In this document: positions 12,319 to 30,654 of the stretch, piece by piece | Position numbering within the stretch: the first letter of the stretch is position 1 | Layout of the letters: each line of letters begins with the position of its first letter | Virus record (IMG/VR): IMGVR_UViG_3300023179_004149 | Span: 1-64,000 of that record | Length of the DNA: 64,000 nt | Strand: one strand, 5' to 3' | Position numbers and translations under genes: made by a program | Notes under the pieces: generated by a model | The model's input: the letters and a program-made list of their open reading frames with translations, nothing else | Database searches by the model: none | Told to the model about the DNA's origin: nothing

Positions 12319-12720
12319 TTAGTTATTTTCTGATTTAATGTCTGCGATAATCATATCGATGAATAGCGGTGTGTTCCCAGCCAGGATGAAATTATTTAGT
12401 TTATCGAATGAAACCCAGAAATATTCTGAGTGTTCACGTTCTGATAAAATAACTGGCGGGATCGAATCTATTGTTGTGTAGTAACAACTAACCATAAATT
12501 CACCACTACCAGATAGACACTCGCCCACATATATTAGATCAGATACTTTTATTCCAGTTTCTTCAAACGTTTCTCTGATGGCACCTTCGAGTGTAGTTTC
12601 ATCTAGTTCGACTTTACCACCTGGTATACACCATCCGTTTGATTTACCCACTCGGTATTGTCTTTTCAGTAATAAGATCCTATCACCGACAACGATACCG
12701 CAAACAGCTGATTTTTTCAT
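12319..12720 (-). CDS. NUDIX hydrolase
   Basis: Nudix box PGGKVELDETTLEGAIRETFEETG; likely start MKKSAVCG just after a promoter. Confidence 0.88.
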   Translation of the reverse strand: MKKSAVCGIVVGDRILLLKRQYRVGKSNGWCIPGGKVELDETTLEGAIRETFEETGIKVSDLIYVGECLSGSGEFMVSCYYTTIDSIPPVILSEREHSEYFWVSFDKLNNFILAGNTPLFIDMIIADIKSENN

Positions 12721-12803
12721 TTCTTTTTGTTTAGGATACAAAAGTAAGAATTTTTTTTGACATAACCAAATAAAAATGGGATAACTTTCGTTATCCCATT
12801 GCG

Positions 12804-12877
12804 TTGTCCTGGTGAGAGTTGAACTCACTACCTTCACCTTATCAGGGTGACAATCTAAACCGTTGATATACAGGACA
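12804..12877 (-). tRNA. tRNA-Ile(GAT)
   Basis: TCACC-CTGATAA-GGTGA. Confidence 0.9.
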
Positions 12878-13000
12878 AAATAAGGTCATTGTTACAACAT
12901 CTCTCACCCACTTTCTTGGCAGGGTATCCATCATGCGTTCCGTTAACCGATGTATAATTTTATAGCCCTTGACGGAACAAGCTGGGCAACCAATTTTTTG

Positions 13001-13072
13001 GGGTCAAGCACGGTATCGATCCGAGTTCTCCTGATTCACAGTCAGGCACATCACCTTAATGCTTCAAGACCC
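13001..13072 (-). tRNA. tRNA-His(GTG)
   Basis: CCTGA-CTGTGAA-TCAGG; G-1:C73 possible; A54-type T loop. Confidence 0.85.
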
Positions 13073-13080
13073 ATGTGTTG

Positions 13081-13153
13081 TAGCCTTATGGTGAATCGAA
13101 CACCAGTTGTCGTCTTGTAAGGACGATGCACTAAACCACTGTGCTATAAGGCT
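13081..13153 (-). tRNA. tRNA-Val(TAC)
   Basis: TCGTC-CTTACAA-GACGA. Confidence 0.9.
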
Positions 13154-13160
13154 ATTAATG

Positions 13161-13232
13161 TTGTGAGTACGAGGTTCGAACTCGTATGACGAATGTATAA
13201 GATTCGCAGCCTAACCATTAGCTGAACTCACA
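13161..13232 (-). tRNA. tRNA-Ile(TAT)
   Basis: CGAAT-CTTATAC-ATTCG; TGTGAGT/ACTCACA acceptor. Confidence 0.82.
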
Positions 13233-13315
13233 ATAATTCTGTCTTTCCAGATGTCAAATATACTATTGACTTGTCAATACTTTAATATTGACGCTTACCG
13301 CATATTAGGGTTAGG

Positions 13316-13387
13316 TGCGCCTTGCTGGTATCGATCCAGCCCCCGCAGCTTAAAAGGCTGCTGCCTACACCTGTTTGCCAAAAGCGC
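13316..13387 (-). tRNA. tRNA-Lys(TTT)
   Basis: GCAGC-CTTTTAA-GCTGC. Confidence 0.88.
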
Positions 13388-13390
13388 ATT

Positions 13391-13840
13391 TTATTGTTCC
13401 AACCATTTATACCAACCTTGTTGTTTAGCTGTTCGCCTATGGTGACAGTTAGCACATCTGGTTTCGCATTTTTTTAATTCTTTCTCTATGGTACCCCAAA
13501 CAGTGGAATATACCATATTTGAAATCACACCCTTTTTATCAACACCATCCATATGATCCGACTGGAGAACTATGGGGTCAGTTTCACCACAAACAACACA
13601 AGGATGATCTAAATAATGCTGATACAATTTTCTCCTATTCTCTTCAATTTCAGCTTTCCTTCGTTTTCTAATCACCGCTTTATGGTGGTTGGTATTTTCT
13701 GAATAATATTGTTTTGATCGTTCATTACTACATTTTCTACAAATATTATTATATCCGTCTTTTTTACCCTTATTTTTATTAAATTCGGATATTTTTTTCT
13801 CGTCTTTGCACTTAGTGCATATTTTCTTATTTTCTTCCAT
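13391..13840 (-). mobile_element. HNH endonuclease gene inserted in the tRNA cluster
   Basis: CTKC...CRKC Zn motif; CVVCGE...LQSDH...CANCHHRRT HNH core. Confidence 0.85.
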
Positions 13841-13881
13841 AATAATAAATATAAGGAAAAAACTTTTAAAATAAACACTGG

Positions 13882-13919
13882 TTAAAAGTGTGGTGCTCTA
13901 CCGATTAAGCTACGAGACC
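13882..13919 (-). pseudogene. 5' half of a tRNA-Lys(TTT), cut just after the anticodon loop
   Basis: GGTCTCG-TA-GCTTAATCGGTAGAGC-A-CCACA-CTTTTAA, then unrelated sequence leading into the HNH gene. Confidence 0.8.
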
Positions 13920-13926
13920 ATTAAAG

Positions 13927-13999
13927 TAGCTCCGAAGGGACTTGAACCCCCAACCCGCTGAGTAAGAATCAGCTGCTCTGCCAATTAAGCTACGAAGCT
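13927..13999 (-). tRNA. tRNA-Lys(CTT)
   Basis: GCTGA-TTCTTAC-TCAGC. Confidence 0.88.
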
Positions 14000-14003
14000 A
14001 TGT

Positions 14004-14041
14004 AAAACTAAAAATGCTCCAGGGTTCACCTGGAGCATTTG
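14004..14041 (-). terminator. Attenuator terminator 2
   Basis: AAATGCTCCAGG/CCTGGAGCATTT 12-bp stem plus T-tract directly before tRNA-Lys(CTT). Confidence 0.85.
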
Positions 14042-14064
14042 CTAAATTTTATTCTTAAACCCTG

Positions 14065-14145
14065 TTAAGAATTAGACAAATAGTCACCAGGCATAGTTTT
14101 AGCTATGACGTGTTTAATATGCTTTATAATGACTAACTGTTTCAT
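14065..14145 (-). CDS. Leader peptide 2 (26 aa, MKQLVIIKHIKHVIAKTMPGDYLSNS)
   Basis: Manual translation; V/I/K/H core; 3' part complementary to the terminator left arm. Confidence 0.8.
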   Translation of the reverse strand: MKQLVIIKHIKHVIAKTMPGDYLSNS

Positions 14146-14247
14146 CTTATTGATTGTTTATGTTGTTTTAAAATTGTTCTCTTTAATAATTATTACAAAA
14201 GTACGAAAAGTTCTTGATTTTGCAAAGTTTTTTTCAAATATTTTTTT

Positions 14248-14907
14248 TTAATATCCGTAATATATCATTACGTTCTTTTTCCAGTTAAATGTCTTATAAA
14301 TGTTTATAAGCCCAAATATACCGTACTCATACTTCCAACTGGTTGTAATGGTATCACCATGTTCTAAACTAAACGGTGGTAATCCACACCACTCCATATT
14401 CATTGACTTAACATGATTTATCATTTCAATAATAGCTGTCTGTTCTTCGCCAGTTAATTTGGTTCCATCAAAAGTATATTTTGTAAACGGCTCCGAACTC
14501 CAATGGTATTCACTCTCAATTGACTTAAGAAATTCAGACGATCTTTCTTTTTCTCGAGAAAACGGTGCCACCATCACTTGATAGTACTTCTTTATTCTTT
14601 CCTGATAGGTCGAAATCACATAAGCCAGAAACTCTTTAGTCACAATATAAAAATCATATTCATCGTAACGAGCCATTAACTCCTTATTCTTAAAAAATCT
14701 TTTTAATGATTTTTTTGGTGGTTCAAACCCATCGTATTTACCAAATTCATACAACTCAGTACCATACTCATATACGCCTTTATACCAATCATCGTCAGAA
14801 ACATGTTCCTTATTAGGATAATGGTCTTTAAGTTGTTCAAAAGACATTGACTTGATTTTATTGTACTCTCGTTTAGGCATCGAGCCTATGTATGTTCTAT
14901 AACCCAT
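14248..14907 (-). CDS. Hypothetical protein
   Basis: 219 aa ORF. Confidence 0.7.
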   Translation of the reverse strand: MGYRTYIGSMPKREYNKIKSMSFEQLKDHYPNKEHVSDDDWYKGVYEYGTELYEFGKYDGFEPPKKSLKRFFKNKELMARYDEYDFYIVTKEFLAYVISTYQERIKKYYQVMVAPFSREKERSSEFLKSIESEYHWSSEPFTKYTFDGTKLTGEEQTAIIEMINHVKSMNMEWCGLPPFSLEHGDTITTSWKYEYGIFGLINIYKTFNWKKNVMIYYGY

Positions 14908-15871: not shown

Positions 15872-16062
15872 CTTTCTCGTTAAAATACTGTTTTAATTCG
15901 TCAATGGTACAGTCCAATCGATATGATATCATATCTTTGGACATGGATAAAAGATAATTTTTAACATCTGTTAAAAAAGATATCATCTCTTCTTTCCACT
16001 CTTCAGTACCGACAATATGTTTTGTCTTCATCTTTATAGTTTTATATCTATAAATATCAGAG

Positions 16063-16135
16063 TGATTCCAGTGGGGATCGAACCCACACCTAATTGATTT
16101 AGAGTCAACTATACTGCCGATTATACTATGGAACC
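16063..16135 (-). tRNA. Amber suppressor tRNA (CTA)
   Basis: GTTGA-CTCTAAA-TCAAT anticodon arm; complete cloverleaf, short variable loop, A73. Confidence 0.85.
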
Positions 16136-19202: not shown

Positions 19203-19413
19203 TATTCAAATCTTTAAATGAGGCCCAGGTTATCCACCCTGTACCGTTACCAAAGTTATGTGTTCTGTTATTATAGAACAGAACTTTACACATTTCGGTC
19301 TTTTCATCAACCTCAAGCACTTTACAACTTGTATTCAATTTTGATGAATTATATTCTTTAGGTGTTTCTGGTTTCATTTTACAAAAATAATAAAAGAACT
19401 TCAAAAAAACAAG

Positions 19414-19484
19414 TACTCCTATTCCGTAACGATCAGAATTCTCATGAGTCAAAGTCATGCGCATCACCTTAATGCTTTAGGAGT
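19414..19484 (-). tRNA. tRNA-Gln(TTG)
   Basis: ACTCCTA/TAGGAGT acceptor; CATGA-CTTTGAC-TCATG; A54-type T loop. Confidence 0.85.
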
Positions 19485-19567: not shown

Positions 19568-19624
19568 TAGTCCCCGAAGGATTCGAACCCTCACCAAGTA
19601 TGCTTACCGTTACACCAGAGAACC
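19568..19624 (-). ncRNA. Anticodon-armless tRNA-like RNA (57 nt)
   Basis: Acceptor, D arm and T arm intact; D and T arms joined by only ACTTGGT. Confidence 0.65.
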
Positions 19625-29514: not shown

Positions 29515-29599
29515 TGGCGGTCTCGATGGGATTCGAACCCATGATCTTCGCCGTGACGCGTTACAGGGCGACAGGGACGACCAACTCCCCTACAAGACC
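29515..29599 (-). tRNA. tRNA-Asp-like gene with a 7-nt insertion in the anticodon loop
   Basis: TCGCC-CTGTAACGCGTCAC-GGCGA; G73; encoded CCA. Confidence 0.75.
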
Positions 29600-30151: not shown

Positions 30152-30167
30152 CCAAACTTTTAAATTG

Positions 30168-30238
30168 CGGTCTATCTCGGTTACGATCCGAGCACTTCTG
30201 TTAGACAGACAGATATGATACCAATTCACCAATAGACC
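30168..30238 (-). tRNA. tRNA-Asp(GTC)
   Basis: TCTGT-CTGTCTA-ACAGA; G73. Confidence 0.85.
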
Positions 30239-30378: not shown

Positions 30379-30479
30379 ATTTTTAAAATGAAAAACGAGT
30401 AATTGACTCTATGCCTCAAACGTCAATGTTCCGACCATTGTACCGTGTTCACCCATGAGTGGGTCGTTTTTCAAATTAG

Positions 30480-30550
30480 CGGGGCTGCCTGGGAACGATC
30501 CAAGTTCTGCAAGTTAACAGCTTGCTGCATCACCTTAATGCTTCAGCCCC
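30480..30550 (-). tRNA. tRNA-Asn(GTT)
   Basis: GCAAG-CTGTTAA-CTTGC; G73. Confidence 0.87.
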
Positions 30551-30581
30551 GTATTCACCAATATGTCAAAGATCACTTAAG

Positions 30582-30654
30582 TGGTGCCCCTCGGTTTCGA
30601 TCCGACCCCCCAAGATTTTCAGTCTTGTGCTTCCACCAGGTTAGCTTGGGCACC
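30582..30654 (-). tRNA. tRNA-Phe(GAA), divergent copy
   Basis: CAAGA-CTGAAAA-TCTTG. Confidence 0.82.

What the first reader, a model, noticed from the sequence alone, without database searches (positions are those of the whole stretch)
13316..13919. HNH endonuclease inserted at the anticodon loop of tRNA-Lys(TTT) and followed by a different intact tRNA-Lys(TTT)
A canonical-looking tRNA-Lys 5' half stops exactly after CTTTTAA. The HNH gene follows, and 3 nt after its stop a sequence-unrelated tRNA-Lys(TTT) begins. Inference: a mobile unit that destroys the resident tRNA gene and brings its own resistant replacement, preserving the match to leader 2.
Basis: partly seen in the sequence, partly recalled or inferred. 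Interest (0 to 1): 0.65.

Follow-up and report, generated by a model that had tools for sequence, protein, structure and literature searches.

The report
Mobile HNH cassette splitting a tRNA-Lys gene
A selfish nuclease gene has landed inside a lysine tRNA gene of a 321-kb phage and carries a spare, very different lysine tRNA, so the phage keeps that tRNA; relatives of the nuclease do the same at other tRNA genes.

Summary
On the minus strand lie tRNA-Lys(CTT), an orphan 5' part of a tRNA-Lys(UUU), a 37-nt leader, a 149-aa HNH gene, 3 nt, and a complete, unrelated tRNA-Lys(UUU).

One correction: a relative shows that the remnant runs 4 nt past the loop (CCAG). The break is therefore in the 3' strand of the anticodon stem.

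An 11-kb metagenome contig (L070) from a related phage settles the question. Its flanking genes are 76-82% identical to the window. The 648 bp from the anticodon loop through the HNH gene and the intact tRNA, to 8 nt before tRNA-Ile(TAT), are 99.2% identical. The left edge of that block falls exactly at the loop.

Fourteen other contigs hold intact members of the broken tRNA's family.

I examined 86 loci of this HNH family. In 34 the ORF abuts an intact same-strand tRNA. Eleven have an orphan 5' tRNA half just upstream, broken at positions 38-42. In two, the remnants of one tRNA flank [HNH + intact tRNA]. The orphan and the intact tRNA always share the anticodon.

Best reading: a free-standing HNH homing-endonuclease cassette that invades tRNA genes and brings a replacement isoacceptor. 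Cleavage, and resistance of the spare tRNA, are untested. It is a new variant of a known kind (compare T4 SegB).

The parts
13927..13999 (-). tRNA-Lys(CTT). A resident neighbour directly upstream of the broken gene, separated by a 7-nt spacer (13926..13920).
   Evidence: ARAGORN; Rfam 62.4 bits. It is 82.2% identical to its L070 counterpart, with compensatory changes in the anticodon stem. It shares the divergence of the host phages, not the near-identity of the cassette.
13889..13919 (-). Resident-derived part of the orphan tRNA-Lys(UUU): tRNA positions 1-31 (acceptor 5' strand, D-arm, 5' strand of the anticodon stem, CCACA).
   Evidence: Truncated Infernal hit. It is 77.4% identical to L070, 7 of 31 differences. 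The family is intact in L074-L077 and L084-L094.
13878..13888 (-). Anticodon loop CTTTTAA plus CCAG (tRNA positions 32-42). This is the left end of the near-identical block.
   Evidence: 100% identical to L070. CCAG pairs with L070's stem CCTGG but not with the window's CCACA. These bases therefore arrived with the cassette from an L070-like donor.
13841..13877 (-). AT-rich cassette leader upstream of the HNH start. It has a promoter-like TTTAAA-17-TATTAT.
   Evidence: 100% identical to L070. A promoter-like site scores 9 of 12; the number of such sites in the region is no higher than in shuffled sequence. The motif TTAAAAG...TATATTTATT recurs upstream of homologous HNH genes in L082, L080, L096 and L078. 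Its function is inferred.
13391..13840 (-). HNH (His-Me finger) endonuclease ORF, 149 aa: an N-terminal Cys4 zinc ribbon and a C-terminal Cys4 HNH core.
   Evidence: PHROG 2255 at 5.6e-32. tblastn hits to annotated HNH / endonuclease VII genes. In 34 homologs C8, C11, C34, C37, C81, C84, H96, C129, N131, C132 and H133 are invariant and D95 is at least 90% conserved. The AF2 model has pLDDT 95, with weak Foldseek hits to beta-beta-alpha-Me nucleases. It differs from L070 at 3 nt and 1 aa.
13316..13387 (-). Intact tRNA-Lys(UUU), the cassette's own copy: GCGC-type acceptor, weak D-stem, T-loop AUCGAUA with A54. It is the only tRNA-Lys(UUU) in the genome.
   Evidence: ARAGORN; Rfam 42.9 bits with two non-standard D-stem pairs. 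It is 100% identical to L070. The cloverleaf evaluates to -23.4 kcal/mol against an MFE of -26.1. Homologous GCGC-type tRNA-Lys genes abut the HNH stop in L071 and L078.
13241..13315 (-). Cassette tail: non-coding, with short palindromes and a TTGACA box. The block ends 8 nt before tRNA-Ile(TAT).
   Evidence: 97.3% identical to L070. Identity collapses to 53% in the following tRNA-Ile(TAT). A promoter-like TTGACA-16-TATTGT spans the right edge.

Best explanation
Window 13241..13888 (minus strand) is a free-standing (intron-less) HNH homing-endonuclease cassette. It sits inside a phage tRNA-Lys(UUU) gene.

The cassette consists of a short leader, the HNH ORF, a complete tRNA-Lys(UUU) of unrelated sequence starting 3 nt after the stop codon, and a 75-nt tail. 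It replaced everything 3' of about position 42 of the resident gene. The orphan 5' part is what remains.

Proposed mechanism:
1. In a mixed infection the HNH enzyme cuts intact canonical tRNA-Lys(UUU) genes of cassette-free phages. The cut falls near the 3' strand of the anticodon stem or the variable loop.
2. The break is repaired from the cassette-bearing genome, with the conserved tRNA sequence serving as a homology arm.
3. The recipient loses its own gene and gains the nuclease together with a divergent isoacceptor. That isoacceptor keeps lysine decoding intact and is presumably not cut.
4. Because the ORF abuts the tRNA, RNase P processing of the tRNA should also trim the nuclease mRNA, as described for segB of T4.

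Shown: the anatomy, the edges of the unit, its recent transfer between diverged phages, the existence of intact targets, and the recurrence of the design across the HNH family.

Inferred: nuclease activity, the cut site, immunity of the spare tRNA gene, function of the spare tRNA, and the role of RNase P.
For: 1. Edges and recent transfer. L070 (NCBI metagenome contig) is 76.6%, 79.0% and 82.3% identical to the window in the flanking genes. It is 99.2% identical (5 mismatches in 648) from 13888 to 13241. The 111 nt on the left are about 80% identical (Fisher p = 2.7e-15) and the next tRNA on the right is 53%.
2. The left edge is the tRNA break. Positions 1-31 differ at 7 sites between the two phages, and from the loop onward they are identical. 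The CCAG after the loop fits L070's stem, not the window's.
3. The orphan is a remnant of a real family. Its first 29 nt in L070 match intact tRNA-Lys(UUU) genes in 4 IMG/VR contigs and 10 metagenome contigs.
4. The HNH gene looks functional. The catalytic and zinc residues are invariant or nearly so, and there is only 1 aa difference between the two copies.
5. HNH and tRNA-Lys(UUU) are linked over long periods. The eight closest HNH homologs form one clade (SH-aLRT 84), and all lie at tRNA-Lys(UUU) genes.
6. The design recurs across the family (86 loci).
   - 34 ORFs abut or overlap an intact same-strand tRNA.
   - 11 of about 16 unique orphan 5' halves found in 818 kb lie within 110 nt upstream of an HNH start, broken at positions 38-42.
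   - 8 loci have orphan 3' fragments beginning at positions 47-54.
   - In L098 and L163 a 5' half and a 3' fragment with complementary acceptor strands flank [HNH + intact tRNA-Lys].
7. The anticodon matches in all 7 independent cases where an orphan and an intact partner coexist: Lys UUU four times, Lys CUU, Gly UCC and Met CAU. Their 5' halves are only 63-80% alike.
8. Precedent. SegB of T4 is a homing endonuclease in a tRNA cluster that recognises tRNA gene sequence, and its ORF ends at tRNA-Arg (PMC2330249).
Against: - No cassette-free relative with the same synteny (tRNA-Lys(CTT) followed by an intact tRNA-Lys(UUU)) was found. An empty site is known only in more distant phages.
- To the right of the cassette the two phages share no detectable similarity for 350-1,150 bp. 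Simple two-armed homologous homing does not explain the present right junction in at least one of them.
- The window lacks the 3' fragment of the broken gene that L098 and L163 retain.
- The 250-nt intergenic stretch left of tRNA-Lys(CTT) is 93% identical. The region is therefore a patchwork with more than one exchange history.
- About two thirds of the abutting HNH-tRNA pairs in the family show no orphan fragments. Insertion next to a tRNA gene, rather than into one, may be the commoner mode.
- The spare tRNA has a weak D-stem and an A54 T-loop, and its function is unproven.
- Pfam HNH models do not match the protein. Structure searches gave only weak beta-beta-alpha-Me hits.
Confidence: 0.75

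Rival explanations
1. The HNH gene simply sits in front of 'its' tRNA, as most of its family does. The orphan half is debris from rearrangement of a tandem tRNA-Lys array, by deletion or unequal recombination between neighbouring tRNA genes, perhaps provoked by nuclease breaks. On this view there was no targeted insertion into a tRNA gene and no selected 'replacement' logic.
For: - In 34 of 86 family loci the ORF abuts an intact tRNA, and most of these have no orphan fragments.
- Several loci have two intact isoacceptors flanking the HNH: L096, L101 and Streptomyces phage Wofford.
- SegB is known to drive segmental rearrangement of tRNA regions (PMC13096335).
Against: - The break points cluster at positions 38-42 in tRNAs of five different identities.
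- In L098 and L163 the 3' remnant lies beyond the intact tRNA, so that tRNA is inside the interrupted gene.
- The left edge of the 99% block coincides with the break.
- The orphan and the intact tRNA belong to different sequence families.
Confidence: 0.15
2. The cassette is kept, and spreads, mainly because of its cargo. On this view the odd tRNA-Lys(UUU), with its altered anticodon stem and A54 T-loop, resists a host tRNA-Lys-cutting defence. The HNH gene acts as its vehicle or amplifier, and the broken canonical gene is collateral.
For: - Host tRNA-Lys is the target of PARIS AriB, cut between positions 40 and 41. A T5 tRNA-Lys variant with stem changes rescues infection (PMC11464382).
- SegB amplifies a tRNA-Tyr gene to beat Septu (PMC13096335).
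- The window holds six tRNAs with A54 T-loops next to canonical ones.
- The spare is the only tRNA-Lys(UUU) in the genome.
Against: - No defence system or host is known for this phage.
- The same HNH design occurs with Gly, Met and Lys(CUU) tRNAs, whose spares have canonical T-loops.
- The anticodon loop of the spare is identical to that of the broken gene.
- Nothing here tests resistance at the RNA level.
Confidence: 0.08
3. The two tRNA pieces and the HNH gene form an intron-containing or split tRNA gene that is spliced or assembled into a working tRNA. Group I introns with homing endonucleases in bacterial tRNA anticodon loops are the model.
For: The break is at the anticodon arm, the classical site of tRNA introns. 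The ORF is a homing-endonuclease type.
Against: - No Rfam intron family matches the region even at E <= 1, and none reaches its gathering score in the whole window.
- No 3' half that could pair with the acceptor strand GGTCTCG exists in the genome.
- What follows the ORF is a complete tRNA with its own acceptor stem.
- In relatives that keep a 3' fragment, positions about 41-50 are missing.
Confidence: 0.02

Closest known systems
SegB of phage T4 (GIY-YIG free-standing homing endonuclease in the tRNA gene cluster; PMC2330249, PMC13096335)
   Same: - It is a free-standing nuclease gene inside a phage tRNA array.
- It recognises tRNA gene sequence.
- It is inherited together with neighbouring tRNA genes.
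- Its ORF ends at the 5' end of a tRNA gene, so tRNA processing touches its mRNA.
- It is statistically associated with tRNAs across phages.
   Different: - SegB is GIY-YIG, not HNH.
- It lies between intact tRNA genes rather than inside one.
- It reads the T-loop consensus of many tRNAs, whereas the clade described here is tied to one isoacceptor.
- No orphan half plus spare isoacceptor design has been described for it.
[quoted passage not shown]
   Same: Their ORFs lie in a phage tRNA cluster. Control of their expression by tRNA processing has been proposed.
   Different: I compared no T5 sequence directly. I found no report that these genes interrupt a tRNA gene or carry a replacement.
Group I introns with homing endonucleases in bacterial tRNA anticodon loops (review PMC3984707)
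   Same: A mobile endonuclease element sits at the anticodon arm of a tRNA gene. The cost to the host is neutralised.
   Different: Introns neutralise the cost by RNA splicing. Here there is no ribozyme and no 3' exon, and the cost is neutralised by a second, complete gene.
Integrative elements that insert into tRNA genes and restore the gene from their own end (general knowledge)
   Same: Insertion into a tRNA gene is compensated by sequence that the element carries.
   Different: Those elements use integrases and duplicate only the 3' end of the same tRNA. This cassette has no integrase and carries a whole tRNA of different sequence.
Streptomyces phage Wofford gene 171 (annotated HNH endonuclease between two tRNA-Met genes; NC_048722.1)
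   Same: It is the same HNH family (36.8% identity). The ORF overlaps the downstream tRNA-Met by 38 nt, and an isoacceptor lies upstream. It is a cultured phage and so usable for experiments.
   Different: Both flanking tRNAs are annotated as intact. The host is an actinobacterium and the tRNA identity is different.

Membership tests
HNH / His-Me finger endonucleases | Sequence match to curated HNH family models | tested here: met
   PHROG 2255 'HNH endonuclease' at 5.6e-32, plus five other HNH / endonuclease VII PHROGs. tblastn hits to annotated HNH genes. Pfam-A gave no hit at E <= 0.01.
HNH / His-Me finger endonucleases | Conserved catalytic His with Asn/His metal ligands, and a Cys4 zinc site around the beta-beta-alpha core | tested here: met
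   H96, N131, H133 and C81, C84, C129, C132 are invariant in 34 homologs, and D95 is at least 90% conserved.
HNH / His-Me finger endonucleases | Beta-beta-alpha-metal fold | tested here: inconclusive
   The AF2 model has pLDDT 95.1. Foldseek lists Hpy99I, T4 endonuclease VII, Gme HNH, Cap5 and Cas9 HNH only at E 0.3-3. The best VIA-align hit is Hpy99I, Z 5.5, covering only the N-terminal zinc ribbon.
Free-standing homing endonuclease gene (intron-less homing) | The endonuclease gene plus a short flank is far more similar between two genomes than the rest of the genomes are | tested here: met
   99.2% over 648 bp against 76-82% in flanking genes, with sharp edges.
Free-standing homing endonuclease gene (intron-less homing) | Sporadic presence: homologous target sites exist without the gene | tested here: met
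   14 contigs carry intact tRNA-Lys(UUU) genes of the broken family without an HNH gene at that gene. No cassette-free relative with the same synteny was found.
Free-standing homing endonuclease gene (intron-less homing) | The enzyme cuts the allele that lacks it and spares its own genome | not testable with these tools
   This needs protein expression and cleavage assays.
Free-standing homing endonuclease gene (intron-less homing) | Biased inheritance in mixed infection | not testable with these tools
   The phage is uncultured. A cultured family member exists (phage Wofford).
Group I intron in a tRNA gene | Ribozyme core and a 3' exon that completes the tRNA | tested here: not met
   No intron family matched at E <= 1 over 12700-14300, and none reached its gathering score in the whole window. 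The genome holds no 3' half.
SegB-like (GIY-YIG) tRNA-cluster homing endonucleases | GIY-YIG catalytic domain | tested here: not met
   The family hits are HNH / endonuclease VII only. The element works like SegB but is not a member of that family.

The most novel reading that the evidence does not exclude
A whole family of phage HNH homing endonucleases has a third way of making insertion into an essential gene harmless. It uses neither splicing (introns, inteins) nor settling between genes. Instead it cuts a tRNA gene at the anticodon stem or variable loop and delivers, in the same cassette, a complete isoacceptor tRNA of divergent sequence that its own nuclease does not recognise.

Each clade is matched to one tRNA identity: Lys UUU, Lys CUU, Gly UCC, Met CAU. 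The conserved tRNA sequence serves as a portable homology arm, which would let the cassette move between phages that share little else. In doing so it would drive turnover of phage tRNA repertoires, including the spread of non-canonical tRNAs (A54 T-loop) that may resist nucleases.
Probability: 0.4. Interest if true: 0.8.

Novelty: new variant of a known kind. Interest (0 to 1): 0.62.

Why it matters
- Homing endonucleases in phage tRNA clusters are known (SegB, the T5 F-Tfl enzymes). A nuclease gene that lands inside a tRNA gene and pays for the damage with a spare isoacceptor has, as far as my literature searches reach, not been described.
- It would explain part of the rapid turnover and mosaicism of tRNA arrays in large phages. 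It would also explain why orphan tRNA halves lie next to HNH genes.
- It gives a concrete, testable pairing of enzyme and target: an HNH clade with a tRNA-Lys gene.
- It offers small, natural nucleases whose targets are short conserved tRNA gene sequences.
- It raises the question of whether the non-canonical tRNAs carried by such cassettes are selected for resistance to nucleases, whether those of rival elements or those of host defences.

Tried and rejected
- Near and distant DNA searches of the region in the GenBank phage collection found only generic tRNA similarity. The 219-aa neighbour gene had no tblastn hit there.
- Single-protein pattern scans of IMG/VR with the neighbour gene and with the HNH protein found nothing. 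Exact scans with the 38-nt half and with a 42-nt piece of the spare tRNA also found nothing.
- Relatives reached through the 219-aa neighbour gene (336 homologs, at most 64% identity) have no tRNAs next to that gene in the 15 loci scanned. They gave no empty site.
- A DNA search of five related jumbo-phage records at E <= 10 returned only AT-rich noise. Their tRNA-Lys genes are unrelated to either copy here.
- Intron or split-tRNA reading: rejected.
- Assembly artefact: rejected, because the same junction occurs in two independent assemblies.
- A profile of the HNH family against PDB sequences gave only a spurious zinc-ribbon hit, McsA at E 0.016. Foldseek and VIA-align gave weak or partial matches.
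- A bS21 gene, a marker of a described freshwater phage group, is absent from the genome.
I therefore made no read-level search for cassette-free alleles and did not use read laying.
- On the HNH tree, tRNA identity clusters clearly only in the closest clade. Deeper branches are unresolved: 23 label changes among 36 labelled rows.

Full report
**Setting**

The window is the first 64 kb of a 320,934-bp IMG/VR virus record that is estimated to be complete. It is a jumbo phage. All its tRNA genes lie on the minus strand between 8.4 and 30.9 kb. ARAGORN finds 31. Rfam adds a tRNA-His and a 57-nt tRNA-like sequence.

**Anatomy (minus strand)**

In order:
- A terminator-like hairpin at 14040..14012.
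- tRNA-Lys(CTT), 13999..13927, followed by a 7-nt spacer.
- A tRNA 5' half, 13919..13882: acceptor strand GGTCTCG, a good D-arm, stem strand CCACA and the loop CTTTTAA.
- Eleven bases later a 37-nt AT-rich leader begins.
- A 149-aa ORF, 13840..13391.
- Three nucleotides.
- tRNA-Lys(TTT), 13387..13316.
- Seventy-five non-coding nucleotides.
- tRNA-Ile(TAT).

The half scores 25.2 bits (E 4.5e-4) as RF00005 positions 1-37 when Infernal is allowed to treat it as truncated. Nothing in the genome can supply its 3' half. No intron family matches the region.

The ORF matches PHROG 2255 'HNH endonuclease' at 5.6e-32. It has an N-terminal Cys4 ribbon and a C-terminal Cys4 HNH core. The key residues are invariant, or in one case at least 90% conserved, in 34 homologs. 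Pfam does not match it. Structure searches give only weak or partial beta-beta-alpha-Me matches.

**The decisive comparison**

The word search with the HNH protein found a 99%-identical copy. It lies on an 11,139-bp NCBI metagenome contig (L070). That contig comes from a related but clearly different phage.
- The genes on either side are 76.6%, 79.0% and 82.3% identical to the window at the DNA level.
- L070 lacks the window's 219-aa gene.
- L070 has an extra tRNA-Lys(TTT), an extra tRNA-Val and a 173-aa ORF.

The alignment of the locus and the counts by segment give:

| Segment | Identity to L070 |
|---|---|
| tRNA-Lys(CTT) | 82.2% |
| Orphan half, positions 1-31 | 77.4% |
| 13888 to 13241 | 99.2% (5 differences in 648) |
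| Next tRNA, tRNA-Ile(TAT) | 53% |

The near-identical block begins exactly at the anticodon loop of the broken tRNA. It contains the leader, the HNH gene, the whole intact tRNA-Lys(TTT) and the tail. It differs from the 111 nt to its left with Fisher p = 2.7e-15.

This is the signature of a discrete unit that moved recently between two diverged phages, or into both.

**Where the break really is**

In L070 the remnant's stem strand is CCTGG. It pairs with the CCAG that follows the loop. The remnant thus reaches about position 42, and the break lies in the 3' strand of the anticodon stem.

The window's stem strand, CCACA, cannot pair with CCAG. The loop and CCAG in the window therefore came with the cassette from an L070-like donor. 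Positions 1-31 are the window lineage's own.

That is what repair of a break close to the insertion point would leave, with a very short conversion tract on the left. This last step is inference.

**The orphan comes from a real gene family**

A degenerate 36-nt pattern covering both versions of the half found intact tRNA-Lys(UUU) genes in 4 IMG/VR contigs and 10 metagenome contigs. All have a canonical 3' half. Only the window's own contig and L070 have the broken form.

**The family habit**

A profile of 34 HNH homologs retrieved 80 IMG/VR loci. With the six loci found otherwise, this makes 86.
- In 34, plus one seen by eye, the ORF's stop lies between 60 nt inside and 15 nt before an intact same-strand tRNA. 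The commonest overlaps are 10 or 15 nt.
- The eight closest homologs form one clade (SH-aLRT 84). All of them sit at tRNA-Lys(UUU) genes.
- Profiles of tRNA 5' halves and 3' parts were searched over 818 kb holding 691 tRNAs. They gave about 16 unique orphan 5' halves. Eleven of these lie within 110 nt upstream of an HNH start on the same strand.
- The breaks map to tRNA positions 38-42. The orphan 3' fragments begin at about positions 47-54.
- In L098 and L163 the 5' half and a 3' fragment with a complementary acceptor strand enclose [HNH + intact tRNA-Lys]. There the spare tRNA is demonstrably inside the interrupted gene.
- In L082, L099 and L111 the HNH gene alone sits between the two remnants.
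- Wherever an orphan half and an intact partner coexist, they share the anticodon. This holds in seven independent cases: Lys UUU four times, Lys CUU, Gly UCC and Met CAU. Their 5' halves are only 63-80% alike, so they are not recent duplicates.
- A cultured example of the family is Streptomyces phage Wofford: tRNA-Met, HNH, tRNA-Met, with a 38-nt overlap.

**How it most likely works**

Shown:
- a unit with defined edges;
- its recent transfer;
- an intact-looking nuclease gene;
- a target gene family;
- a recurrent insertion point;
- a linked isoacceptor.

Inferred:
- The HNH enzyme cuts canonical tRNA-Lys(UUU) genes near positions 39-50.
- The break is repaired from the cassette-bearing genome, using tRNA sequence as a homology arm.
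- The spare tRNA gene differs at every stem position around the loop, in the D-arm and in the T-loop, and so escapes cutting while keeping lysine decoding.
- RNase P processing of the abutting tRNA trims the nuclease mRNA, as reported for segB and tRNA-Arg (PMC2330249).

In this genome the spare is the only tRNA-Lys(UUU). Its loss would cost the phage that tRNA.

**What does not fit neatly**

- The right flank of the cassette shows no similarity between the two phages for several hundred bases.
- The window lacks the 3' fragment seen in L098 and L163.
- The 250-nt intergenic stretch upstream of tRNA-Lys(CTT) is 93% identical, so the locus has at least three exchange histories.
- Most family members show no orphan fragments.
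- No syntenic cassette-free relative is available.

**Comparison with what is known**

The nearest system is SegB of T4. It is a GIY-YIG homing endonuclease inside the tRNA cluster that reads the T-loop consensus of tRNA genes and carries neighbouring tRNA genes along (PMC2330249). It was recently shown to amplify a tRNA gene against a defence system (PMC13096335).

This element works like SegB but is not a member of that family. It has an HNH catalytic domain. It sits inside a tRNA gene. Its clade is tied to one isoacceptor.

It also differs from tRNA group I introns, because it has no ribozyme and no 3' exon. It differs from integrase-driven elements that restore a tRNA 3' end.

Five literature searches found no description of an HNH gene that interrupts a phage tRNA gene while carrying a spare isoacceptor. 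The library is not exhaustive.

**Verdict**

It is best filed as a new variant of a known kind. It has a family-wide pattern that deserves a proper census and a cleavage assay.

Noticed in passing
window 30581-30654, 30479-30550, 30167-30238, 19413-19484, 13316-13387, 13001-13071 (all minus strand): Six tRNAs (Phe, Asn, Asp, Gln-UUG, Lys-UUU, His) have A instead of T at T-loop position 54 (GGATCG... or TGATCG...). Three of them (Asn, Gln-UUG, His) share the D-arm GCATTAAGGTGATG. They sit beside canonical tRNAs, in places as pairs for one amino acid. The same loop occurs in relatives (L070 2663-2736; L049; the HNH-linked tRNA-Lys of L100). Such loops would break the GGTTCRANTCC site that SegB needs (PMC2330249). 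Resistance to nucleases that read the T-loop is an untested idea.
   Followed up: partly
window 13001-13071 (-): A tRNA-His(GTG) that ARAGORN misses and Rfam scores at 38.3 bits. It has mismatches in the acceptor and T stems and may be decaying.
   Followed up: no
window 19568-19624 (-): A 57-nt tRNA-like sequence (Rfam 32.9 bits) with an acceptor stem, D-arm and T-arm but no anticodon arm. It lies directly after tRNA-Gln(CTG). It could be a deletion scar at the same place where the HNH family inserts.
   Followed up: no
window 29515-29599 (-): An 85-nt tRNA with an irregular anticodon region (ARAGORN reports a 4-base anticodon, tgta) and an encoded CCA. Rfam scores it 50.9 bits.
   Followed up: no
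window 16062-16135 (-): A tRNA with anticodon CTA (an amber suppressor; ARAGORN labels it Pyl). I did not examine whether the phage recodes TAG.
   Followed up: no
window 14248-14907 (-) compared with L070 1568-1592: The 219-aa gene has 336 homologs in large phage contigs but is absent from this position in the close relative L070. The 250-nt intergenic stretch downstream of it is 93% conserved between the two.
   Followed up: partly
L010 5957-6079; L041 1870-2004; L056 2357-2488; L003, L004, L005 (related jumbo-phage contigs): ARAGORN in intron mode predicts tRNA genes with inserts in or near the anticodon arm, 12-91 nt apart from one spurious long call. Rfam also gave over-long tRNA matches of 105 and 131 nt in G004. 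They may be short intervening sequences or false calls.
   Followed up: no
L175 (Streptomyces phage Wofford, NC_048722.1 96236-96877): A cultured phage carries a family member between two tRNA-Met(CAT) genes, with the ORF overlapping the second by 38 nt. It is a ready experimental system for this HNH family.
   Followed up: partly
L070 2663-2736: The close relative has a third tRNA-Lys(TTT), with a GCGC-type acceptor and an A54 T-loop, between tRNA-Ile(TAT) and tRNA-Val. The window lacks it. The spare is therefore redundant in L070 but is the only tRNA-Lys(UUU) in the window's phage.
   Followed up: partly
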